Shown here: positions 37,204 to 59,642 of the stretch, in pieces
Layout: each line of letters begins with the position of its first letter
Position numbering within the stretch: position 1 is the stretch's first letter
Source of the DNA: Aplysia californica
Lineage: Eukaryota
Length of the DNA: 64,000 nucleotides
Assembly (NCBI RefSeq): GCF_000002075.1
Contig: NW_004798170.1
Span: 82,100 to 146,099, forward strand
Reading direction: 5' to 3'
Translations under genes and position numbers: made by a program
Notes under the pieces: model-generated
Databases searched by the model: none
Seen by the model: the letters and a program-made list of their open reading frames with translations, nothing else
Told to the model about the DNA's origin: nothing

Positions 37204-37468
37204 CATCAGTCACGGTATTATGCCCTCCTGCTGTTGTAGTTGTTGTTGCGGCCGCAGGGTTGCCCGGCAACTGTGGGTGGCTGTTATCAAGAGGTGACAC
37301 CTCTTGCAACGCTTCACAGACAATATTTTCTCCCTCGCCACCCAGAGCTGCCGTGCTGTCCTTCGCGGTTTTCAAGTTTCGCTTTTTCGCCTGCCCTGCC
37401 GTCCCCGCTTTCTTCTTTCTCTTTTTGTCCGTCTCACTGGAGACAGCAGAGGTCAGCTGGCTCCAAGC
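37204..37468 (-). CDS. KDM4: KDM4 linker exon with basic NLS-like cluster (AWSQLTSAVSSETDKKRKKKAG...)
   Basis: CAG acceptor and GTGAGA donor. Phase 0 in and phase 1 out, which bridges donor 41862 to exon 36466. No conserved domain. Confidence 0.75.
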
Positions 37469-38960
37469 CTGGAAAACCACCATGTCACAAAGGTCAGACA
37501 AACAGCTCCCACACTCATAAAACGACCATGTAACAAAGGTCAAACACTTGCCTAACTCATAAAACCTTCCAAATATTACAGACAAACACCTCCATACCTC
37601 ATGCAACCTTCCAAATATTACAATCTAAACGACCATGTCACAAAGGTCAGACAAACACCTCCCTAACTTAACTCATACAACCTTCAAGGTATTACAATCT
37701 AACTTCATAGGATACTGATTTTATGGACGCCTCAAATTTCCAATGTTCACAATGTGTCTTCTTTTTTGGATAGTTAAAGATGCCTGAAATATGTAATCAT
37801 GTTTTTTACACTACCATATCTGCAAGTATATTGTTTCATTTGTAAGCAATATCAAACTTTATCAATGTAATGTTTAATGTACTGTCGAATAACTTTAAAA
37901 AGAAATAGAATTATTTTTTCAGTGGTTTTTTTTCTTTCTTAAGAAGAAAGAGTACTTTTAAAAATATGATGTTGTCTTCTGTCCATTACCAAAGACTGTA
38001 TATACCCGCTTACAAAACAACACAAATGAGGTCTAAAATCTATACTCGCTTATCATACACCCAACATACAGACAGGACCAAGCCCAACAAAGGGGAACGT
38101 GTCCAAATAAATATGATCAGACATGCCAGCTAACCCCTCCATAACCATAAATAGATTTCCTCTGACCTCAGAAACTCTCTCAAAATCAAAGTTCAGGGGG
38201 GGGGAAAGTAAAAGTCTCCAAACCCCAGTAGATTCAGATTACGTTAGGAAATGATTGAGGCAAATAAACTAGAATTGCAAATACAAGCCAATAAAAATGT
38301 GTATTTTCACCTCTTTCACAAAAAGTTGTGCAAATATTGCAAATAAACCTGTGTATTTTCACATTATTAACGATAAGGTCAATATGACCAGCAAACTGAA
38401 TTCAAGAAAAAAATAGAATTTTACGCAAATCTGATCGGGGTTCTTCCAAAGGAAAAAAAAAAGAATTAGAGGGCTCGGGTTTTATCTGAGTACTCAGCAG
38501 GTGTGTATTATACTACTACTAGCATTTCAAGTCATGAAGGCCACAACGAAGTGGAAGAGTGATGGGTTACAAGGCAGGCTTCAAGCTGAAAATTGTTGCA
38601 TACTCGAAAGACCACAGTAACTTTCCTGCCGGTTTGCAGTTATAGATTTCCAGCACTTTATTTCACACACACCGAGTCTCCTCCAGCACGTAAAAAAAAT
38701 TCACCCCATATTACACACGCGACCTACAAAAATAGGTCCATTTGGGAGTCAAAGTCAGTCCCTCGTATTATTCATCAGGTTGTGCTATAAGCGAGTATAA
38801 ACAGTATGGACAGAACAGAAAATCTTTTACCAAGTTCACTTCCTTATCTCTAAACATCTTTTCACCAAATAGCAAGCAAGGAAAAACAACTGTTGCATGC
38901 AGTTTCCCTTCTGACATCTACATTGACATAAGAAGACTAGACACTTCCTTCTGAAGCCTA

Positions 38961-39124
38961 CAGTGCAGCCTCTCTATAATAACATTGTCGGGACCCCAAA
39001 AAAATGTCGTTATAAAGAGGCAACCAAAAACATTACTTATGATAAAAGCAAAAAATCGGGACCTGGGCCCCATGTATACAGAAGATGTTGTTATATCGAA
39101 GATCGTTATAGAGAGGCTGCACTG
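38961..39124. mobile_element. Tc1/mariner-type MITE (164 bp)
   Basis: TA|CAGTGCAGCCTCTCTATAA ... TTATAGAGAGGCTGCACTG|TA: a perfect 19-bp TIR with TA TSD. Confidence 0.9.
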
Positions 39125-40853
39125 TATCTTGACAGCCTCATAAACAAACCATGTCTGTTTAGTCATTACTTTATACGTAAGGACAAGTCTGTATCATTGT
39201 GATTTTTTACTTGACTCACAGTGAGACAAATGGTGGTATAGCACATTAATATTGGTCTGATGACTGTTATATAAACTGACAGGGTGAAATGGGGATTTTT
39301 GTTTGTTAATTAAAAATAAAGCATAAAAGCATCAGAGAGAAACTAAGATGGTTTGTGCCTAGGTCATCAATATACACAATATTATGATAAACCTCCTAAA
39401 ATACAAATATGCGTAGTCGAAATTGCCCATGAAGGCCACCCATTGTTGAAAAAAGTGGCTGTCTTAAGGCAAGTGGAGGTCTGGGACAATGTCTTTAACC
39501 CTATCCGTACCTTGTGTTTTACTATCATATCCATACGACCTGGGAAACTCTGTGCCACCACTTCCAAAGAGGAAATTTACTTGTTAATCCGATCCTCACG
39601 CTTTGCATAGCAGTCTATCAAAATGATTTTTTGAGAAATACTGAAAGTTTCAACGAGATCTTCGTATTAGAAGTATTCTAAAATGTGATGAATAAAACCA
39701 TTACAACCCCGGGGGTACAAAAATGACCCCAGGGCGTACAGATAGTGTTAAAATACATGTTTTTACTTTTTTTTAAACAAGGAGAGAAGTGGGAAGTGGT
39801 AGTTTGTACAGGTGGCTGTTAGAGGATGTTCCACTGTACTGGTAAATATCTGAGGTGTCAAGTCTACTTTAGCATGCCAACTGACAGGAAACAAGAGAAT
39901 GGGTGCTACCTTCCAGTTACACACATGCAAAGCACAAGGCAAAGGGAAGAGAAATAGAAATAATGACACAAAAAACGTATATTGAAACATTTTTAGTTAT
40001 TTATTTTCTTTTTTTCTAATAGGGAGTACTTGACAGCTTTGGTTTTTTTACCATCAGTTGCCTTGATTTATTTTTTTTTTTTGATTGGGGGGTGGGGGGC
40101 AGCAGACTTGTTTTTTTAATTATATTTGAGGAAAATGCCATCTTCTCACTTAGTAAAAATTACAATTTACAACAAAAAAATCTTTAGCGATACACTGTCA
40201 TACAATGCCAAAGGAGAAAAACCAGGTAGATGACCAACAGGGATATACCTTCAGTGTTCCACCCCTGAAGCTATCCATAAATACAGGACATTACTCGCAG
40301 ATGCCCCCCACCCCACCCATCCCTCTTTTATCACTACAAATCTAGAAGAAAATTCTGTGACAAGGACCACAAATTATTCACTTCGAAGTATTACCATTGT
40401 TAATTCCTATGTTAGCATTTTCAGTAAAATATTAGTACTTCTACTTCCATACAACAAAAGGTTATGCTACAAAGGAATCTCCGAGTAAAAAAGAGGCCAA
40501 AGAAGGGAAAACTAAGAAAGAAAGGGAATGTCAACAGAAATTAAATAAAATAAATAATAGCAATCACCACAACCAATTCAAATTTAGACAGTGTCCAACA
40601 ACACCGAAAAAAGAAAAATCACCACCACAGGAACAATATGAAACAGTAAGAAAATGCCATGGCAACTTTATTGAGGAAAAAAAGAAAAGCACACATGCAT
40701 ACATAGACAAATACGAGAAACGTGCAAATACTGTCACCAAGGAGGTCTGACATAAATGATGGCAAAACATACATTCTACACAGGGAGCGCCACAACATCA
40801 AAACACCAAATCCTATATTATTTCACTCAAAGACAAAGATGCTACACAACAAA

Positions 40854-41100
40854 ATGGTTCACCCCTCTAGTTGAGATTGTAAGAAAAATACTGAAGTGTC
40901 TATGGTGACAGCTATATTATGCATTAAATATCATTTTTAGCAGGGGACAGACACATCATGCGTACAAATTGAAGCAAAGAATATTTTGAACTGAAAATGT
41001 CTCATTTTAGAAACCAAACAGTTTCCTTTGTCAGCGTCAGTTTCGTAATTATGCAAACAAATTTTGGAGGAAGCTCTTTAGATTCTAGAGGGTGAACCAT
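40854..41100. mobile_element. MITE (about 247 bp)
   Basis: TIR ATGGTTCACCCCTCTAG / CTAGAGGGTGAACCAT. Confidence 0.75.
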
Positions 41101-41861
41101 CATGACCAGTGCTATGTTTAGACACAGTCCAACCATCTCCAGAGTTCTCCATGCCCACCCCCACCCCCCCTCTCAAGCTGACACAGAATGTTACATCTTC
41201 CAAGGCTAGAAAGCCCAACACAAACTCCAGGCCTTCATGCTTCATTTATTAATCAAATTTATTCATTTGATACCTTCACTGCCAGACGGTTCAGGGCATG
41301 TTTTATATCGGCCCTAGAAAAAGGGGTTCTAATGGCCATGTCTTCAAAGCAAAAAAAGCCATGCAAATCTCAAGTCTTCATAGCGAAAAAGCCAAGGCAC
41401 ATTACACAATTTCATGGCAACAGGTCTCATTCCAATTTCATGTCTTCAAATACAGGATAACAGGTTCTCTTCGTAAAAAACACACGTGCAAAACGTGTCT
41501 TTGTCAATAAAAGCCTTGGTCAAACTTCATCTTCAAATACAGGGACCATGCAAATTCCAGTGTTTGGAAGAAGGCCACATGCAACCCTCATGGCAACTAC
41601 TACAAAGGGCTCATACTCCTATGTCACTAGGACTAAAAGAGCCCAAATGGGAGAGGACAGTGTAAGGCCCCATTTACTCTTCCCAGACTAAAGGTCCATG
41701 CAACTTTCCCACCTTCAAGGCTACTACAGGTTACTAAAGGATGCAGGGTGCACACAACATTCAACTGTCAACACAACTACACCATGAGGAGGGTTCAACA
41801 CCGAAAAGTGGTGGGAAAAACTAACACTGAAAATTTTGACAAAATAGCAAGACACCTATAC

Positions 41862-44800
41862 CTTGTTACCTTTGCTCAAGGACAGTTCGTCTAGCAACCC
41901 TAGGTCGGACGTGCTTGGAGGAGCAGAGGTCGCAACGTGGTCTTGAACCATAACTAATTCGGGAGGCGTACTCCTCTCTTCTTCTAAGGTGCAAGAAAAA
42001 CTTTCTGGCATCAAGACTGGAGGGGTACCATATTCCTGCCCAGCCAGAGGGGCTTCTTCATTTGCTGACCCATTACTTTTCACTTTCTTTGGCCCGCTTT
42101 GACTCAACTTCTGGGTTCTAGCATGCAATCGTTTTGCTTCGACAGTTTGTCGCAACTGCTCCTGTCCCAGCTTGATTTTTCTCTTACTGTGTTGTTTGGC
42201 TTGCTGTGGCGGCAATGTAAGAGGGGGGTAACGACTAGAAGGGGCTACTCTGGTGCTGGTGATGATAGGCTGGGGGATGAGCTGCCTTGAGGCCATGGCT
42301 ACACTGGGCTCAGGGAAGGAGGGGACTAGGACACGGGGCCGGGGAGAAAGAGAGCTCAAAGGAGTAGTGAGATGGTGGACTGAAGGTGGTGAGATGACCC
42401 AGTTGGGGTCAGTGCTGGCCGGGTCACAGAGACAAAGATCTGACGGCCACGAGCTTCTCACCTGTGGGGACAGACGAGGCATCTCGGGGGGCTGGCTGCA
42501 CGCAGGAAGATCCACGGACTGCTGCTTAGGGGTCGTGTCAGGGTCAGGTTTGGTTTTGGCGGCTTTCCGAGACCTGCTTTTCCCCGGGCGCTTCCCTGTC
42601 CCGGCGCTCTGCCCGTGGGATCGAGGGATGCCGACAGCTGCGTAGTGGTGCTCTTCGATGTGGGGGGAGAGCTGTGGGAACAGTTGGTCAGAGGACAACG
42701 ACGATCCCGTGTGGATGTGGAGATCTCCGAGACCGGGCGAGGCAGACGAGGAAGTCGAAGGGTTAGTGGGGGAGTAATGTTTCATTGGGGCGAGCTGAGT
42801 CAGGTTAGATGAGGGATGGCCATCTAGAGACGGCTGTCGCAACTCAGGCATGGATAAATCATTTCTTAGCTCGGCAGAATTAAAAATGTCTTGGTAAGAC
42901 GACGTAGAGGATAACGAAGATGTGGGGCGGAAGGACTCCAAGGTAGCACACAAGGGATTGTCAATGGGAAGTGGTATATTGTCACCATTAGTCACAGCAG
43001 GGGACTGGAAAGGGGTCAGTGTGGGCATTCTGTCACTGAGGGCAGGGGACAGGGACGGGGGGCGGGACTTCTGCTGGTTGACGGGCAGGTCTGGTTTTCC
43101 CCTCTGAGGGGTCAACTCAGGGGCAAAGGAATGGTCAGCACCATGCACATCGGTCTGAGGGAACAACAGGGGGGCGCCCGATAAGGGTGTGCTCGACTGC
43201 ATGCTGACAAGTACGGGTGGTGCCACCACGCCCTGCAAGCTAGGGGAAGAGGTCTTGTGAACAGTGATCACATTGGAGTCTATATTCAGCAGGTGCACGT
43301 GATCTTCCTTACTGGAGGAGTTGGAGGAGAGGAGTCCGAGGGATGTGGTGGGGAGACTGTTGGTCCCGACTCCTCCCTGAGCCATCTGCAGCAGAGTCTC
43401 AGCGACAGAAACGGTACACTGTGAGGAGGAAGCAGAGACAGTGGGAGCAGCCACAAATCGAGATGCGACCTTGGACAAACTAGCTTTGCCAGCAGATGGT
43501 TTGCTCCTCTGGCCGGGGTTCTGCTTCTTCCTCTTGGCAGCTTCAGCCAGCGGAGTGTTCATTATTTCCTGCTGTTGCAAAAGGGCAGTCCGCTGGGCCT
43601 GAGCGAGTATCTCTCGTACCCGTGACTCGGTGTTGGAGACACTCGACAAAGTATTCAAGAGTTGCGAAGTTGGTTTCTGATTCCTTTCGGTGCCAACAGA
43701 ATCCAGGGAGTTTGAGAACACAATGGGTGTACAGTCTGGCCTTGGCAGCGCTGGAGAGATGTTCAAACCCCCACTTCCACGGACCTTGATCACAGTGCTT
43801 TGAGGGACACTAGTAGCTACAGTCTGTAGGCTGCCAGCAGCAGAGGCTGGGGAAGATGCAAACGCTTGAGTGGGCGGTGCAGGAGCCTGAACTTTGATCG
43901 TGGTAGGAGCAGTTTGAGGCACAAACTGAAAGGCATTCGAATCCTTTGTCTCTTGGCTTGTACTCCCATTGGTCCCGCTCACCAATTGGCCCGGGTTCAC
44001 AACAATCTGGGGTACAGCCCCTCGCTGACCTATGATCTGACCCATAAACGACTTCAGGGGCAAACTGGTGTGAAAAGTTTGCGAAGGAAAAGCCTGGAAA
44101 GCTGACTGAGGCAAGGAGGTGACGACCGTTAGCTGTCCCGAGGGACCCACGACAATCTGGTTCTGGTTGAGTCCAAGCTGTGTGCCAGTCCGACCTACTA
44201 AGGTGTTCACAAACTGCTGGGCTGGAGCTGTTTGTACAGAGCCATTCTGTGGCAAGACCCTGAAAAACTCAGATCCAGACTGGTTTGAACTACCATTGAA
44301 ACCAGTACCTACAGGAGCTGGCAAAGATGTGTTCTGCACTCCACTTATCACAGGCTGCTGACTAGGGGCATTCCCAGGCGCTTGTTGAGATCCCATGTTG
44401 TTCCCGGGCATCTGTTGAGATCCCATGTTGTTCCCGGGCATCTGTTGAGATCCCATGTTGTTCCCGGGCATCTGTTGAGATCCCATGTTGTTCCCGAGCA
44501 TCTGTTGAGATCCCATGTTGTTCCCGGGCATCTGTTGAGATCCCATGTTGTTCCCGGGCATCTGTTGAGATCCCATGTTGTTCCCGGGCATCTGTTGAGA
44601 TCCCATGTTGTTCCTGGGCATCTGTTGAGATCCCATGTTGTTCCCGGATATCTGTTGAGATCCCATGTTACTCCCAGATATCTGTTGAGATCCCATGCTA
44701 CTCTCGGGAGAACGGATTATTCTCACATTCATGACAGAAGGCTGGGTGAGATGAGCCTGTGGTTGGGGGAGGAGTCCTGCTGGAGAAGTGACATTTGAGG

Positions 44801-46662
44801 TTTGGACACAGGGAGCAGCATCTTGCCTCCCATTGGCCATTTTGAGCTGTAGAAAATTCTCCTGTACTGACGGTGGTGCCACCAGTGTATTTGTGTTTTG
44901 TCTTTGAAAAGAACCGTTAAGGATAGAGGCCGTGGTGTTTTGACTCGCAAACTGTGGCTGTGAGTTGTTGGTAGAGGGGGGATTGAAATACGAGGTAGCC
45001 TTGTTGGAACCAAAACCATTGGACGACACCTGCACCGGAGTGTTTGCGAGATTGTTGGGAGGCACAGGCTGGGAGACACTAGCAAGCTGTATCGGTAGTT
45101 GACGACCGTCTGTTAGACTCACAATCTGACCATTTGGCAGCTTAACCAGACCGGCTGTGGGACCTGGCTGTGTTGTTACAGGAGACTTCACACTGGGCAC
45201 AGCTTTCCCCGCCAGTTTTACCAGTTGTCCAGCACCATCATTCTGCTGCACGGTGGCAGCCACTTTGGTCCTTTCACTCTCGGCCCTCAGAGCCCCCCAC
45301 ACGCCACCCTCCACTTTGGTGGGCTTGGGCATCCAGGAAGGTCGCGCCCCCCACACTTGATGGCCATCGGTGGACTGACCAACCCCAGACATCGGCAACT
45401 GGTTGCACTGAGCAGTGTTATGGGGAGAAGCTTGGGACAGCAGCGGCGGGGAGAAATGACCAGCATGCACTTGTGGCTTCTCAACAACTGTCATGGGACC
45501 GCTCCCTGGCAGCGACATCGCAGAGCCCACAGCACCAGCCTTACGTACAGAGACACCCGAATCGGCCACAAACGGAAGTTGCGATGGAGTGACGGCAGTC
45601 GCGGGGAACGAAGCCAGCGAGGCCGCTTGACTGGCTGAGCTCTGGGGAGGTCTGTGCTGTAGTGTGACCGCACCGCACGGCTCACCCGCCGAACGAAGCA
45701 GCTCGTGGGGCTTGAGGCCGCCTCGGAGCAGCTGGTGAGGCTGGATCTTCTTTGGGAGCACCACACCCGCTACAGGTACACCAGACGTTGTGCCAGCCGA
45801 CTTGTGCTCCATCTGGGCAGTGCCTATGCTGGTCGGGTTGACAGGAACCCCAGAAGACACGGGGATGTTGACCGAAGTCTGAGGGCCCTGAAGAACTGTG
45901 CTGCCTTGATATCTTCCACCATTCTCCCCTTGAGGAGTAACACTCTGAGGGGAATTCTTTACTTGACTGGGAACGGGTTTCAGCAACTCCGCTTTCAGTT
46001 GTTCCCCTGAAAAACCATTACAGACCTCTTTCTTCACAGATGCTGCCAAGGAAGAATCTGCGGATTCCTGCTTTACTTCACCTCCAGACGGCACTAGGGA
46101 TTTCATGAACGCCTCTTGAAAAGCAGAGATGCCTTTTGGAAAGCTTGACGGTTTTGATTCTTCAAGAGGTTTCGGTAACTTCAGATACTCATCAATCTTT
46201 GAGCGTTTCACAAGCTCGTCCTGATTCACCAAGGCCTGTGGCTTCTGATCCTCCTCCGACTTTGGCGACACACTCGTTGCTGTCAGCGGCACCACATGGC
46301 TTTTCACTGGGCTGAGAGAGTTCCCTGCTGCTGCTGTAGGAACCATCACATTAGAGTTCTTACTCTTGGAAGCGCTTTGTTTCCCTTTCTTCGCTGGGAC
46401 CTCCTGACCAGTCGGACCCTCCGCTGCCTTCTTTTTCCTGGGTTTCTTCTTCGGGGCAGTTTGGCCGTCTCCAGACGAGTCCCCTGAAGGAAGCTGTGGC
46501 TTAACTTTTTTGGTGGACTTGTGGGATTTAGATTTGGGAGCATCAGAAGACCCATTGGCAGATACCTCTTTGACAGACTCCGCGGTAAAATCGTCCTTCA
46601 GCGGGTGGCGACGGGAGTGAGCTGTACCAGAGCTATTCGCTTCAATCTTTTTCTTGGAAGAC
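41862..46662 (-). CDS. KDM4: KDM4 giant exon (4801 nt, about 1600 aa, disordered, S/P/Q/G-rich)
   Basis: AAG acceptor after a polypyrimidine tract at 46663-46700. Its phase-2 start fits exon 49253 and runs in frame into ORF 41856-46349. Donors at 41862 (GTATAG) or 41870 (GTAACA). Confidence 0.85.
44373..44702 (-). repeat. Coding 30-bp minisatellite, 11 copies, encoding (NNMGSQQMPG)n
   Basis: TCCCATG recurs every 30 nt from 44391 to 44691. Confidence 0.95.
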
Positions 46663-49844: not shown

Positions 49845-50165
<321 letters not shown>

Positions 50166-53852: not shown

Positions 53853-54250
53853 CACCCCCCCCCTCCGGCAGTGCTACTGACTGAAGTGTCTTTAGGCCAT
53901 TTCCAAAGATGGGACATTAACTATGTTCTTATGCAGAGTAGAACTGTAATTGTAGATGGGCTGATTCATTAATGTCATGGACGGCAACAGGGAACTGCTG
54001 CTTTTTCTTTCTTCGTCTTTACTATCTTCATTTTCCTCTACTTCTTTTGTATGTTTGTCACTCTCTTGTGAACTGCTCTTTCCTGGGTGCCTTCATAGTC
54101 AAAGCAGACTTTGTGCTGTTGAGGCTAGAGAGGTGAGCAGAGTAAGCCTGATTCCCCATTTGGACTTTTCTGTCGACATCTACCCCTTGGCGCTCAAATG
54201 ACCTTATGCAGTTGCGAGCGCTGTAAAACCCTACAAAAACTAAAACTAAA
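53853..54250 (+). mobile_element. Family B retroposon
   Basis: CACCCCCC 5' end and shared 3' end; AGAGACTC on both flanks. Confidence 0.85.
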
Positions 54251-54268
54251 GAGACTCATGAGTCTCAC

Positions 54269-54627
54269 CTTGAGCCAGTCTTTCCAGCCTCTGTCCGTGC
54301 TCCGGCGGTATGGCATACCAGGACTTGGGGGCACCAAAGTGGAGGTAGTTGATGCTGTATAGGTCCATGTCCTCTGTGTGCCAGGCGAAGGTCGTCTTCC
54401 ACATGCCAAAGTAGAGGTAAGCCGTCACCACACCCTCAATCTTGATGCCATAGTCATCCTTCACGTGGTCCAAGATGGTGCCCAGGCGGTTTATGTTCCA
54501 GTAATCCTGGTCGTCATCTGTGATGGAGCCGTTGATGTCAGCTCCGTAGATTGCTTGGCCAAATGTGACGTTTTTCCAGTATTTCCGTTCCAAGTCCTCA
54601 AAATCAAAATGATTTGGTGTGCGATAC
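54269..54627 (-). CDS. KDM4: KDM4 JmjC exon ([19 protein letters not shown]...IYGAD...[25 protein letters not shown]...RLERLAQG)
   Basis: CAG acceptor and GTGAGA donor; HxE Fe ligands and the 2-oxoglutarate-binding Y/N/K residues are present. Confidence 0.98.
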
Positions 54628-54960
54628 CTGTAAAAGATATAAACAAGTTCAGAAACTCACACTGCCAAGTCAAAACATATTGTGATAGCTGCTAGAATAA
54701 TGATAAAGTTATTGCTCAATATGTAAAGCTGGATCGAATGAACTACACATTTTTCTTGCAAGAGCCACAATAAATATAATTGTCTGATATGCAGTGTTTC
54801 GAGAAATAGGTCTCAATTCATTTGTGGCGAATGAACAGAGGTCCACTCTCTTAAGGTACAATGGCATCATTTTAAAACAAACTTTTATCAACAATAAAGA
54901 AAACTTTCTTACGCATCGTTCTAACATCAAATCAAATCAAGAAATGTACACTTCGGCTAG

Positions 54961-56703: not shown

Positions 56704-56883
56704 AAGCTGCTTAAGTTGTCATGATGGCATAAATCAGCACAATGAATGATAATGATCAGCTCCAGCACATACACACTGAAAACAAGGGGAACTTTCTCCA
56801 CTTGATGTCACTTTAACAATTAAATTATAAAATTTCTCTGTAGACACTATTCACAAAATTAAAACATACAACATTTAGCTCAC

Positions 56884-57012
56884 CTTGGCTAAGCCTGCCC
56901 TGTGGGCTCCTTGAGACTCAATATACTTTATGTACTTGTTGAAATCTTTGAATTCATCATATGTAGGCCTGAAGACCATTATCTTGTCAATACCCCCACT
57001 AGACGTCTCCAT
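56884..57012 (-). CDS. KDM4: KDM4 first coding exon, JmjN ([43 protein letters not shown]); exon begins at 57045
   Basis: ATG at 57012-57010, GTGAG donor, CAG acceptor at 57048-57046; JmjN consensus. Confidence 0.96.
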
Positions 57013-59642
57013 TGTAGCTGATCAGAATGCAACACTCAAAATCTTCTGAAAAATAGGAAAGCAGATTTTATAAACAAAGGGAAAGCACAAAACTGTTTTA
57101 AATACTAACATTAAATGAAAACCACAAGAATCAATGCATATTCAAAACAGAACAAAAAATTTCAGACAGCATTCGGCATTATCTCTTGCCACAAACAGGA
57201 ACAAACATTCTCTAAGGAAAGGTCACATAAACACAGTCAGAAGTTGATCAGAAAAGGAACTCTTCAAGTGAAACCAAGAGGTGGCTAAATAAAGATAAAA
57301 AATTTGTACAATGCAGAGCTACCATTCTGGCCAAGTTTTTACAGAGTTGTACTTCTTTCTGACACTATTTCCACAAACCAACAAGTTAATTATCCTAGCA
57401 ATTATTATACATATATATATATATCATGGTCCCAGGAACTCCAGCCTTCTAAACTTAAAAAAAGAAAAAAACTTGGAGACAGCATTGCTTTTTACTTTTC
57501 TCAACTTTTCCTCATGTACTAGGTACCATTCAACAATGAGGACACACGATATATTTCCTACAATAATATATTGCATATTTTTCCCTACTTGTTTCTTGCT
57601 TTAGATACGTAAAAAAAAAAAAAACAACATGTCTGTCTTGAACAGAAGCTGAGACATTTGCGAGAATGAGGTGGGGGTCACCTGGTATCAGAGGTTTAAA
57701 AAAAAAGCAGAGATAAATAGCTGCTAAAGTTTGGTGACTGCCAAAGTTTGAGAGTCCTTGGAAACTGCAAATTTACATTTGTTGTGCCTTTGATCAACTG
57801 TTATTAATGTAAAATTTACCCTAAACACGTGTTTTTAAATGTTATGGAGAAACGGTGTTGATACACACACAAAAAAAAAAAAGGGGGGGGGGGTTGATAA
57901 AAATGTCCACTGCACTTATGACTGTCTCCAAGAGAAACATCTTTCTTTTGTTTCTATTCTCATGTCCATTATCTTTGGTAACTGACAACTTATATTAATA
58001 GCCATTCAGAAGGCTTGACCACAACCAATTCCAAGTATTGCATAGTTAAATCAAAGAGGTCTGGAAATACACACATGTAGCTATAAAGTACACTGAATTT
58101 AAATCATACTTTCTGGAATCTCATCATTGTCAGAGACACACACAGTCACAGCCATCTTATAATGCCATCATTCAAAAATTTTCTTTCAAACCAACACACG
58201 AGATAATGCATGTGAAACAGGCGTCTAACCATGTGCTGGGGTTGGGGGATGTTGAATGGGCAGCAAGAACATCACACACAGAGTATAAGGTACACATATT
58301 TTATGTTGTATGCATCATATAATATTGTGAGTGTGTGTGTGTATGTGTGTCGCGAAAATCGCATGTCATTAGGTAAGCACTGTATAGAGTCACTCCTTGT
58401 GTGTTTTTTAATTTATCTGTAGCGCCTAGCCAGGCGAAACGCCCAGCTGTTTCTTTGTATTTGAACACACACACACATGACATATATGAGGACAGGTTGG
58501 CGGAAAACTTTTGTAGCCAATGACCACTATGAGCAGGTTTTGAGACCAACTCATCACGCAAATGACAGAGCCTGGCTACTTTGAACAGGGACTGTTCGGA
58601 CAGGTTAAAATCTAAAATACAGTCAAAGCTCGTATACTCCCAGATTTTGCAAATATGTACAAAAAGGACAAGTGCTTCCATAGTAATTGCACCTTAACAT
58701 TGCTAAAACCAACCGCTTGAGCTATACGGTTCTTACCAAACTTTGACATAAATTTTCCCCGCTATAATATAATCAAAGTAAACTGGCTACGATAGGTATA
58801 ACAGTAATTACACACTCAGTGGCTACTCTTTTCTACACCTATCTCTACGAGCTCAGCCTAATTTCTTCTAGCACTTGGCCCCAATCTGTTCCTGATTTCC
58901 ACTTATGAAAACATAATTTATTCAAAGGCTTTGGTCAATCAAAAATTTAAAAGTTTTAAATAAATATTTAATAACATCAACAAATGTATTGAAATTTTAG
59001 TTGCTCAGAGAAACTTCAAAGGAACAGTGCCACCTCAGCTAGTAGCATTCTATCTGGCTAACTGATGACAAAAAGGCTGGCAACCACATGTGAGGCTTTT
59101 ATTGCGATTTTGTAAGGATTCACTCAAGTCTACAAGATAGAGGTTTGAGGCGGCCTGAGGATTGACACGTAATGGATTTAAAAAAAAAAAAAAGACATCT
59201 CTACAGGGTCCTTATATATCTTATAATAACCAAGCTTCTGATCAGGCAGAAACTTTCAGTTTGATTTTACGTAACAAAAAAACCCAGTAAAATTCTGCTG
59301 AACTGTAATTGTTTTTGTAACCTAATAGGGTGTTACCCAACTTGTTATTCCTCTGCACATGTTAACAGCATGACACATAATACCTAGATGAGGCAAGACT
59401 GACCAGTTTGTCTCTAACCAATAGTCTCCACCAGTCCACGACTAGTCGAGAGAGCAATCAGTTGAATCAATGCTCTATCCCGTTATACTGTCATCTTCAT
59501 ACTCGTCCCAAGCCCAAGGTCAGTATTATAACGTGATTTGACAGTATTTATAAGAAAAACAAGTGTCAAAGAACAGTCGCCATCAGTACAGGGAACTGCT
59601 ATGACAGAGATGTGACCGCTAAGCCATGTTTTATTGGGGGGA

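What the first reader, a model, noticed from the sequence alone, without database searches (positions are those of the whole stretch)
42006..43172. Seven PxLxP (MYND-ligand-type) motifs clustered in the KDM4 insert: a possible reader-eraser tether for H3K36me3
Seen: the last ~430 aa of the giant exon contain PLLFP, PELTP, PSLSP, MPTLTP (43011-43028), PQLSP, MPRLSP (42465-42482) and PVLMP, plus near-matches (MPELRQP, PPELV). By eye I found no PxLxP in the preceding ~1170 aa of this also Pro-rich exon. Established: the ZMYND11/BS69 MYND domain binds PxLxP peptides (E1A, EBNA2, MGA; often MPxLxP), is dimeric, and ZMYND11 reads H3.3K36me3. This KDM4 keeps the NxQ and RKD determinants linked to H3K36me3 demethylation in KDM4A-C. 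Inference: a multivalent MYND-docking platform could couple a ZMYND8/11-type reader to the H3K36me3 eraser. I do not know of such a link for vertebrate KDM4.
Basis: partly seen in the sequence, partly recalled or inferred. Interest (0 to 1): 0.75.

Follow-up and report, generated by a model that had tools for sequence, protein, structure and literature searches.

The report
Conserved PxLxP motif cluster in snail KDM4
The sea hare's histone demethylase KDM4 has a long floppy insert whose last third holds seven proline-x-leucine-x-proline motifs that related snails also keep, so they look like real docking sites, perhaps for the chromatin reader ZMYND11, though no binding has been tested.

Summary
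Observation confirmed. The window is Aplysia californica. The minus-strand gene is a KDM4 with a 4.8-kb exon (46662-41870). All seven PxLxP lie in exon residues 1165-1553. None occurs in the 1164 residues before them or elsewhere in the 2443-aa protein.

Shuffles expect about 0.9. Corrected for after-the-fact motif choice, Aplysia alone gives about 3% (99 of 3000).

The stronger evidence is replication. Orthologous inserts from Lymnaea, Physella, Bradybaena and two unnamed snails are enriched in the same tail: 23 motifs against 2.4 expected. Their heads hold 1 against 2.7. Motif P and L are far better conserved than other P and L, and five of the seven sites are shared with at least two other sequences.

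The extended form, nonpolar-P-x-L-[S/T]-P, fits published rules for ZMYND11 ligands. The tail models as disordered. The genome encodes a complete ZMYND11 orthologue with 10 of 11 peptide-contact residues identical.

The organism is a gastropod, not a vertebrate. An alternative splice donor sits directly after motif 6.

The parts
41870..46662 (-). Giant exon of the KDM4 gene (about 1600 codons). Acceptor AG at 46664-46663. Its last base is 41870, 42462 or 41862 depending on the donor used.
   Evidence: Open frame, sequence, NCBI models P0001/P0002, joints. No Pfam family matches.
41871..43406 (-). Tail of the insert, from the conserved VAETLLQMA anchor to the exon end. It is predicted disordered and is the only part of the protein that holds PxLxP.
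   Evidence: The AlphaFold2 model has mean pLDDT 47.2, with 332 of 450 residues under 50 and one helix only.
43158..43172 (-). Motif 1, A-PLLFP-Q (exon residue 1165).
   Evidence: Lymnaea and Physella have C-PVLTP-Q at the aligned place, and P0004 has M-PVLTP-H nearby.
43107..43121 (-). Motif 2, A-PELTP-Q (1182). It is a full PxLxP only in Aplysia.
   Evidence: The orthologues have PELTC, PELTS and SELTP.
43044..43058 (-). Motif 3, P-PSLSP-A (1203), inside the conserved block SRPPSLSPALSDRMPTLTPF (43008-43067).
   Evidence: It is identical in Lymnaea, Physella and P0004, and degraded in P0005 and Bradybaena.
43011..43028 (-). Motif 4, MPTLTP-F (1213-1218), 11 residues after the start of motif 3.
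   Evidence: Physella has MPILTP and P0004 has IPVLAP. Lymnaea has MPTLSL, which lacks the last P.
42663..42677 (-). Motif 5, F-PQLSP-H (1330), which opens the conserved island PQLSPHIEEHHYAAV (42633-42677).
   Evidence: P0004 has C-PKLSP-H, and P0005 and Bradybaena have C-PILSP-H. It is lost in Lymnaea and Physella.
42465..42482 (-). Motif 6, MPRLSP-Q (1395-1400), which ends two codons before the internal splice donor.
   Evidence: P0004, P0005 and Bradybaena have MPDLSP-Q. It is lost in Lymnaea and Physella.
42006..42020 (-). Motif 7, P-PVLMP-E (1549). The last P is found only in Aplysia, whereas PP[VL]L is kept in all four orthologues that cover this part.
42831..42851 (-). Near-match MPELRQP.
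   Evidence: P0005 has MPELTL at the aligned place.
41952..41966 (-). Near-match PPELV, inside the island ERSTPPELV.
   Evidence: PxL is kept in 3 of 4 orthologues.
42460..42461 (-). GT of the internal alternative donor (CAG|gtgaga). The exon then ends at 42462, right after MPRLSPQ. The join to 37468 is in frame into the PHD/Tudor exons.
   Evidence: Joint 37467/42461 in contigs of X1 and X4, sequence, frame. This equals NCBI isoform X3, P0002. The Bradybaena model P0010 splices at the same place.
41868..41869 (-). GT of the terminal donor seen in RNA-like contigs (AAAG|gtaaca). The exon then ends at 41870. The join to 37468 shifts the frame and reaches a stop after 11 further codons.
   Evidence: Joint 37467/41869 in X1, X4 and X13, sequence, frame.
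37204..37468 (-). Next exon (AWSQLTS...). Acceptor AG at 37470-37469.
54249..54656 (-). Context: open frame holding the first part of JmjC. Other domain-bearing frames: JmjN at 56878-57021, the second part of JmjC at 49845-50165, PHD-like plus Tudor at 32553-33086, and the second Tudor at 31373-31531.
   Evidence: Pfam.

Best explanation
The last ~450 residues of the insert are a disordered platform. It carries an array of short linear motifs of the form nonpolar-P-x-L-[S/T]-P, and selection has maintained them in euthyneuran gastropods. Their most likely role is to dock a MYND zinc finger. The best candidate partner is the dimeric coiled-coil-MYND end of the animal's ZMYND11 orthologue. Single motifs would bind weakly and pairs would bind strongly through avidity, as published for EBNA2. 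This would hold the H3K9/K36 demethylase next to a reader of H3.3K36me3. The S/T-P inside most motifs could make docking sensitive to phosphorylation. Shown here: the motifs, their excess, their conservation, the disordered context, and the presence and conservation of the candidate partner. Inferred: any binding, the identity of the partner, and the effect on chromatin.
For: 1. Excess in Aplysia: 7 against about 0.9 expected.
2. The same regional excess in every orthologue, counted from the anchor. Lymnaea has 3 against 0.34, Physella 4 against 0.45, P0004 6 against 0.35 and P0005 3 against 0.28. With Aplysia this sums to 23 against 2.4. The ~5500 residues of insert heads hold 1 against 2.7.
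3. Conservation: motif prolines are identical in a mean of 2.43 of 4 orthologues against 1.00 for other prolines. Motif leucines score 3.00 against 0.90.
4. By position, P1 scores 20/28, L3 21/28 and P5 14/28. This mirrors E1A mutagenesis, where the first P and the L are essential and the last P tolerates alanine (PMC6315623).
5. The residue before P1 is P, M, A, C, F, I or L in all 24 motifs, against a background of 0.41. That paper finds A, P or M there in functional ligands and says a polar T appears to interfere.
6. MPRLSPQV has the same M-P-x-L-S-P pattern as the crystallised EBNA2 peptide, whose contacting residues are M382, P383, L385, S386, P387 and V388. In Aplysia a Q stands between the last P and the V.
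7. Two motifs together bind the BS69 dimer at 0.24 uM, which the paper gives as 30-150 fold stronger than either motif alone (34.9 uM measured for the second motif).
8. The tail models as disordered.
9. A ZMYND11 orthologue lies at G000:C10 with WH, bromodomain, PWWP, coiled coil and MYND. Ten of the 11 named contact residues are identical, and M531 becomes I.
10. [S/T]P sites outside the motifs are not conserved (0.45 against 2.0 of 4). The conserved unit is therefore the whole motif.
Against: No binding test or complex model could be run. After correction for choosing the motif afterwards, Aplysia alone gives only about 3%. The four orthologues are not independent: Lymnaea and Physella share a superfamily, and P0004 and P0005 resemble each other. 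Alignment of disordered sequence is uncertain; for example, the PVLTP of P0004 aligns to a neighbouring site. The conserved islands are longer than the motif (SRPPSLSPALSD......HIEEHHYAAV...QVR.W..D), and the +1 position is as conserved as L3 (21/28). The real binding unit may therefore be something else that merely contains PxLxP. Conservation at motif 6 is confounded by the splice donor that abuts it. Lymnaea and Physella lack motifs 5 and 6. [quoted passage not shown] At least 17 MYND loci exist in the genome, so ZMYND11 is only one candidate. A phmmer search of 1.84 billion representatives found the tail only in these snails, so any link is lineage-restricted.
Confidence: 0.4

Rival explanations
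1. The motifs are functional and conserved, but they serve a non-MYND partner. One possibility is phospho-regulated L-[S/T]-P sites for a proline-directed kinase plus a phospho-reader. Another is that they are parts of longer binding elements that fold on binding, with PxLxP incidental to them.
For: The position before the last P is S or T in 18 of 24 motifs, and the S/T class is kept in 22 of 28 orthologue cells. The conserved islands extend beyond the motif, and +1 is conserved at 21/28. No binding data exist.
Against: Other [S/T]P sites of the tail are not conserved (mean 0.45 of 4, n = 11, against 2.0, n = 5). P1 and L3 are the best conserved positions, which a generic proline-directed site does not require. 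The strict nonpolar residue before P1 matches the published MYND rule. From recall, no other domain class has P-x-L-x-P as its core consensus; this was not tested here.
Confidence: 0.3
2. The conservation reflects other constraints and not peptide docking. Candidates are nucleotide-level splicing signals, as at the internal donor beside motif 6, or general constraint on a few islands of the linker.
For: Motif 6 abuts CAG|gtgaga, a donor used in Aplysia and in the Bradybaena model. This constrains the Q-V-R codons.
Against: A donor constrains only the last two or three exonic bases. It does not constrain the M-P-x-L-S-P codons upstream. No joint was listed at any other motif. The same amino-acid pattern recurs at nine alignment sites with different x residues.
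Confidence: 0.12
3. The cluster is a chance or compositional by-product of a Pro-, Leu- and Ser-rich disordered segment.
For: The tail is richer in P (14%) and L (10%) than the head. The motif was picked by eye, and 99 of 3000 shuffles hold some equally extreme three-position pattern.
Against: Residue and Markov shuffles give about 1 against 7. The excess recurs in each orthologue's tail and not in the heads. Motif residues are conserved well above other P and L (p about 2e-4 each).
Confidence: 0.07

Closest known systems
EBNA2 CR7/CR8 PXLXP pair bound by the BS69/ZMYND11 coiled-coil-MYND dimer (PMC4742278, passages read)
   Same: Both have several PxLxP in a disordered region. The first EBNA2 motif has the form M-P-x-L-S-P, like MPRLSP, MPTLTP and the orthologues' MPDLSP, MPVLTP and MPILTP. 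Avidity from two motifs on a dimer gives a ready mechanism for an array.
   Different: EBNA2 is a viral transactivator with two motifs about 50 residues apart. Here a cellular demethylase carries six or seven motifs, with start-to-start spacings of 11 to 153 residues. Binding is shown for EBNA2 and not here.
Adenovirus E1A CR2 motif MPNLVPEV (PMC6315623, passages read)
   Same: Both need a nonpolar residue before P1. P1 and L are critical and the last P is dispensable, which matches the conservation order here (P1 and L3 above P5). HAdV-A12 has two functional motifs separated by 10 residues, close to motifs 3 and 4 here (starts 11 residues apart).
   Different: The E1A position before the last P is V. 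Here it is mostly S or T.
GATAD2A PPPL-Phi array bound by the ZMYND8 CC-MYND dimer (PMC13196413, passages read)
   Same: A cellular chromatin protein carries four motifs in a disordered stretch, with multivalent binding to a dimeric MYND reader. Aplysia also has a ZMYND8-type MYND (L023).
   Different: That motif needs three consecutive prolines, and the PAAA mutant loses binding. The Aplysia near-matches PPVLM and PPELV have only two.
Drosophila KDM4A-HP1a docking (PMC3384587 seen as a search listing only; the PxVxL motif is recalled)
   Same: A linear motif outside the catalytic domain ties a KDM4 enzyme to a chromatin reader and steers H3K36me3 removal.
   Different: No P-x-V-x-[LM] match was seen by eye in the Aplysia tail, and this was not formally scanned.

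Membership tests
BS69/ZMYND11-type MYND ligand (PxLxP short linear motif) | Core P-x-L-x-P | tested here: met
   There are seven matches in the Aplysia tail and 23 in the five non-redundant tails counted from the anchor.
BS69/ZMYND11-type MYND ligand (PxLxP short linear motif) | Aliphatic or aliphatic-like residue (A, P, M) directly before the first P; a polar residue appears to interfere (PMC6315623) | tested here: met
   Aplysia has A, A, P, M, F, M, P. Across 24 motifs the counts are P7, M6, A4, C4, F1 and I1, plus one Lymnaea motif. My script mis-scored that one as G because of index wrap-around; it is preceded by L. C, F, I and L go beyond the paper's A/P/M set.
BS69/ZMYND11-type MYND ligand (PxLxP short linear motif) | Lies in an accessible, disordered region | tested here: met
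   The AlphaFold2 model has mean pLDDT 47.2 and no secondary structure at any motif. The alignment behind it had only five rows, so this is weak support.
BS69/ZMYND11-type MYND ligand (PxLxP short linear motif) | Motif conserved against a diverging background | tested here: met
   Five of seven sites keep the full motif in at least two other sequences, and two are Aplysia-only.
BS69/ZMYND11-type MYND ligand (PxLxP short linear motif) | A cognate MYND domain with an intact peptide groove exists in the same organism | tested here: met
   L024 (G000:C10) matches PF24324 at 49.8 bits. Its best solved relative is ZMYND11, E = 5e-17. Ten of the 11 contact residues named in PMC4742278 are identical. 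The coiled coil matches ZMYND11 at E = 3e-11.
BS69/ZMYND11-type MYND ligand (PxLxP short linear motif) | Physical binding that depends on P1 and L | not testable with these tools
This needs a bench assay.
ZMYND8/ETO-type MYND ligand (PPPL-Phi) | Three consecutive prolines, then L and a hydrophobic residue | tested here: not met
   The tail has PPVLM, PPELV and PPVLV but no PPPL (translation, motif requirement).
KDM4 (JMJD2) histone demethylase | JmjN + JmjC, then PHD-like fingers and a double Tudor | tested here: met
   Pfam hits lie on minus-strand frames of the window, and the NCBI models carry the same six families.
KDM4 (JMJD2) histone demethylase | Residues tied to H3K36 as well as H3K9 activity in KDM4A-C: Ile-71, Asn-86, Ile-87, Gln-88, Arg-309 (PMC3308871) | tested here: met
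   At a constant offset of 3, P0001 has I68, N83, V84, Q85 and R306. Four are identical and one is I-to-V. HTED and HAGFNHG are at 185 and 273. That these hold the metal ligands of KDM4A is recalled. Activity itself was not tested.
Proline-directed phosphorylation site cluster | [S/T]-P sites conserved as such | tested here: inconclusive
   The five [S/T]P inside motifs are conserved and the 11 outside are not. Phosphorylation cannot be tested here.

The most novel reading that the evidence does not exclude
In euthyneuran gastropods the H3K9/K36me3 eraser KDM4 is physically tethered to the H3.3K36me3 reader ZMYND11. The tether is a multivalent, phosphorylation-tunable array of nonpolar-P-x-L-[S/T]-P motifs bound by the dimeric CC-MYND. 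Alternative splicing at the donor that abuts motif 6 decides whether this docking platform is joined to the enzyme's own PHD-Tudor reader module or ends without it.
Probability: 0.2. Interest if true: 0.65.

Novelty: new member of a known kind. Interest (0 to 1): 0.42.

Why it matters
If the motifs do bind ZMYND11, this would be a direct reader-eraser coupling for H3K36me3. Four searches of the held paper library turned up no such link in the listed titles and abstract openings. It would also show how a lineage-specific disordered insert can rewire a conserved chromatin enzyme. Aplysia is a classical model for long-term memory, where chromatin regulation is studied, so the prediction can be tested in a tractable system. 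If the motifs do not bind a MYND domain, the result is still a clean example of a conserved motif array in a fast-evolving linker, and its partner remains to be found.

Tried and rejected
A search for more orthologues reached only four further lineages. The phmmer search of 1.84 billion representatives with the tail gave 4 proteins at E <= 0.001. The three word-indexed searches gave only the Aplysia isoforms, Lymnaea, Physella and Bradybaena. The ESM Atlas gave no usable hit. KDM4 of other molluscs and of vertebrates was therefore not compared.

My first route to a ZMYND8/11-type gene failed. I looked for contigs that hold a generic zf-MYND hit together with a PWWP or bromodomain hit, and none of the 15 MYND contigs qualified. 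The one PWWP+bromodomain contig (C94) held a PHD/zinc-finger frame that I read by eye as BRPF-type, and no MYND frame stood out in what I saw of the listing, which was cut in the middle. The specific family PF24324 then found both genes.

I considered and dropped several other readings of the motifs:
- An FBW7-type degron at LTPFQS. It fits only in Aplysia and is not conserved (by eye on the alignment; the degron pattern is recalled).
- HP1-type PxVxL. No exact match was seen by eye; the pattern is recalled.
- The plus-strand ORF 42253-42645. I treat it as an antisense artefact of the GC-rich exon.

Supplementary files of the papers were not opened. Supplemental Fig. 8 of PMC3308871 and the S figures of PMC4742278 may bear on the residue mapping and on the affinities.

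The window's exons were searched one by one. The frames across the two joints were worked out by arithmetic and by translating the downstream exon by reference in two frames.
Full report
WHAT IS THERE. The window comes from Aplysia californica. The tail of the large open frame is 100% identical to NCBI 'uncharacterized protein LOC101863626' isoform X2 and 99% to isoform X3 (P0001 of 2443 aa, P0002 of 2283 aa). The gene lies on the minus strand. Pfam finds JmjN (56878-57021), JmjC (54249-54656 and 49845-50165), a PHD-like finger with Tudor_2 (32553-33086) and a second Tudor_2 (31373-31531). Between JmjC and the PHD fingers lies one exon of about 1600 codons (46662 to 41870). It matches no Pfam family.

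THE OBSERVATION. All seven PxLxP are present at the coordinates given, as are the two near-matches. There is none in the 1164 exon residues before them and none elsewhere in the 2443-aa protein. Shuffling the 389-aa segment gives a mean of 0.85, and 0 of 20000 shuffles reach 7. For the whole exon the figures are 7 against 1.38, P = 4.5e-4. A first-order Markov model of the 451-aa tail gives 1.03 and P(>=7) = 2e-4. PxLxP is the most enriched of all three-position a.b.c patterns in the tail. Because the motif was chosen after looking, I asked how often a shuffled tail holds any a.b.c pattern as extreme. The answer is 99 of 3000. On Aplysia alone the excess is real but only modestly significant.

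ORTHOLOGUES. A phmmer search of 1.84 billion representatives with the tail found four proteins at E <= 0.001. These were the Aplysia isoform P0002, P0003 (Lymnaea stagnalis) and two unnamed Logan proteins, P0004 and P0005. Word-indexed searches added P0009 (Physella acuta) and P0010 (Bradybaena similaris). P0010 is nearly the same sequence as P0005, so I did not count it as a separate lineage. All named species are euthyneuran heterobranchs. P0009 and P0010 carry the KDM4 domain set around a comparable giant insert.

I split each insert at the conserved anchor [VI]AETL[LI]QMA. The tails then hold these counts against the shuffled expectation:
- Aplysia: 7 against 0.95.
- Lymnaea: 3 against 0.34.
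- Physella: 4 against 0.45.
- P0004: 6 against 0.35.
- P0005: 3 against 0.28.
- The shorter Bradybaena model: 2 against 0.16.
The shuffle P values run from 0 of 5000 to 0.011. The five non-redundant tails sum to 23 against 2.4. The heads, about 5500 residues in all, hold a single motif against 2.7 expected.

CONSERVATION. The test used a MAFFT alignment of the tails with four orthologues (Lymnaea, Physella, P0004, P0005).
- Aplysia motif prolines are identical in a mean of 2.43 orthologues, against 1.00 for the other 54 prolines (p = 2e-4).
- Motif leucines score 3.00 against 0.90 for the other 51 leucines (p = 1.5e-4).
- By site, motifs 1, 3, 4, 5 and 6 keep a full PxLxP in two or three other sequences.
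- Motifs 2 and 7 are full motifs only in Aplysia, although ELT and PP[VL]L are kept.
- Two further sites are PxLxP only outside Aplysia: AP[CY]LSPQ in Lymnaea and Physella, and PP[FL]LQP in P0004 and P0005.
- Summed over the seven sites, identity is P1 20/28, L3 21/28, P5 14/28 and +1 21/28.
- The residue before P1 is nonpolar in all 24 motifs of the five sequences. My script scored one Lymnaea motif as G through an index wrap-around; one search shows that L precedes it. The background frequency of that residue set is 0.41.
- The residue before the last P is S or T in 18 of 24 motifs.
- [S/T]P sites inside motifs are conserved (mean 2.0 of 4, n = 5). Those outside are not (0.45, n = 11, p = 0.004).

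There are caveats. The orthologues share ancestry, and two pairs of them are close. Disordered sequence aligns poorly. The islands are longer than the motif.

DISORDER. An AlphaFold2 model of the 450-residue tail, built on a five-row alignment, has mean pLDDT 47.2. In it 332 residues fall below 50. There is a single helix at model residues 348-371, the basic stretch at exon residues 1496-1519, and none of the motifs lies in it.

COMPARISON WITH KNOWN MYND LIGANDS. I read passages of the following papers, not the whole texts.
- PMC4742278: in the BS69 CC-MYND complex, EBNA2 residues M382, P383, L385, S386, P387 and V388 contact Y532, C534, Y540, Q546, Q547, W550, C558 and R560, the backbone of M531 and H533, and W536 of the second MYND. 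The second motif alone binds CC-MYND at 34.9 uM and the MYND domain alone at 93.4 uM. The two motifs together bind at 0.24 uM, which the paper fold stronger than either motif alone.
- PMC6315623: the minimal E1A ligand is MPNLVPEV. P113 and L115 are essential and P117A is tolerated. The residue before P1 is A, P or M in functional ligands, and a T there appears to interfere.
- PMC12839526: lists E1A, EBNA2, MGA, ETS-2, ZHX1 and ALKBH6 as PxLxP partners. The words 'KDM' and 'demethylase' do not occur in it.
- PMC13196413: ZMYND8 CC-MYND binds PPPL-Phi motifs of GATAD2A, again with a gain from two motifs.

The snail motifs fit the BS69 rules in three respects that were not used to find them. They have a nonpolar residue before P1. 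P1 and L are conserved above P5. M-P-x-L-S-P forms are frequent. They do not fit PPPL-Phi.

THE CANDIDATE PARTNER. A generic zf-MYND search of the genome gave 15 loci. None of them looked BS69-like to me on reading the frames, and none shares a contig with a PWWP or bromodomain hit. The specific family PF24324 found two more.

The first is G000:C10:2108215-2108322. Upstream on the same strand lie a SAMD1-type winged helix, a PHD-like Cys/His-rich frame (no Pfam family matched it; read by eye), a bromodomain, a PWWP and a coiled coil. Their best solved relatives are ZMYND11: MYND E = 5e-17, coiled coil E = 3e-11 and PWWP E = 6e-10.

The second is G000:C878:110388-110492. Its best solved relative is ZMYND8, and a weak PWWP hit lies 15 kb upstream.

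I counted the ZMYND11 numbering back from the chain end in the alignment. All eleven residue types named fall into place, which checks the numbering. The Aplysia MYND is identical at ten of them, and M531, a backbone contact, is I. In the ZMYND8-type MYND, W1041, Y1048, Q1051 and W1055 are kept and F1037 is Y.

THE ENZYME. At a constant offset of three residues from the KDM4A numbering used in PMC3308871, P0001 has I68, N83, V84, Q85 and R306 for Ile-71, Asn-86, Ile-87, Gln-88 and Arg-309. HTED and HAGFNHG lie at 185 and 273. That paper, however, found that Q88K and R309G variants still act on H3K36, and it singles out Ile-71, which is also kept. That HTED and HAGFNHG hold the metal ligands of KDM4A is recalled.

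SPLICING. I laid contigs of four runs on 37100-43099. X8 covers the exons and the introns, so it is DNA. X1, X4 and X13 leave most intron bins empty apart from a repeat at about 38.9-39.9 kb (X4 also has one small piece near 38.0 kb), so they behave as RNA, although no run is on record as RNA.

Two joints to the acceptor at 37468 were listed. The first runs from 41870 (donor AAAG|gtaaca) and is seen in X1, X4 and X13. It shifts the frame and reaches a stop after 11 further codons. The second runs from 42462 (donor CAG|gtgaga, directly after MPRLSPQ) and is seen in X1 and X4. It stays in frame into the PHD/Tudor exons. It equals isoform X3, and the Bradybaena model splices at the same place.

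The donor of NCBI isoform X2 (exon end 41862) was not among the listed joints. Contigs drop rare forms, so this does not show that it is unused. As far as these data go, the form that carries PHD/Tudor holds motifs 1-6, and motif 7 belongs to a form that would end without them.

LITERATURE ON A KDM4-MYND LINK. I ran four searches: KDM4+ZMYND11, JMJD2/MYND domain/PXLXP, demethylase+PXLXP and KDM4+ZMYND8. No listed title or abstract opening describes such binding. I read only listings, plus passages of the one review that held all the terms (PMC9755447). That review discusses KDM4 only as a hypothetical target of ZMYND10. Papers outside the held library were not searched.

VERDICT. The motif cluster is real, it recurs across euthyneuran snails, and it behaves like an array of selected linear motifs. 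I put 'functional array' at about 0.75. I put 'docks a MYND domain' at about 0.4 and 'docks ZMYND11' at about 0.2. It would be a new, lineage-restricted client of a known recognition system, and it is predicted, not shown.

Noticed in passing
window 41868-41870, 42460-42462 and 37468: The terminal donor seen in all three RNA-like contig sets (exon end 41870) joins out of frame and reaches a stop after 11 codons. That form would lack PHD and Tudor or would be degraded. Only the internal donor (exon end 42462) was seen to join in frame. NCBI isoform X2 uses a third donor (exon end 41862) that was not among the listed joints.
   Followed up: partly
window 44383-44697: A tandem array of a 30-bp unit (10.5 copies, 96% matches) encodes the decapeptide NNMGSQQMPG. 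The window and P0002 have 11 MGSQQ copies, while P0001 has 7. This points to a copy-number allele or a model difference. Lymnaea, Physella and Bradybaena carry different peptide repeats in their inserts.
   Followed up: partly
window 43380-43406 and 43593-43622: Two short islands upstream of the motifs are conserved in the orthologues that cover them: RVREILAQA, followed by a Q-rich stretch, and SV.VAETL[LI]QMA. They look like amphipathic helices and could be further docking elements.
   Followed up: no
window 42255-42287: The island RQLIPQPIITS is almost identical in Lymnaea and Physella (RQL[VI]PQPI[IV]TS) but diverged in P0004 and P0005. It lies in the alternatively spliced last part of the exon.
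   Followed up: no
G000:C878:95499-110492 (L023): This is a second ZMYND-type reader gene, with a ZMYND8-like MYND followed by a Q/P-rich stretch. L023 also holds a run of N (withheld or a gap), which I did not touch.
   Followed up: partly
window 39500-39900: Contig depth is extremely high in all four runs (up to about 776,000 in the DNA run). This marks a high-copy repeat in the intron between the giant exon and the next exon.
   Followed up: no
G000:C94:207490-230939 (L019-L022): A minus-strand gene with a PHD/zinc-finger frame, a bromodomain hit and a weak PWWP hit, which I read by eye as BRPF-type. It is unrelated to the finding. It was met while I searched for ZMYND genes.
   Followed up: no
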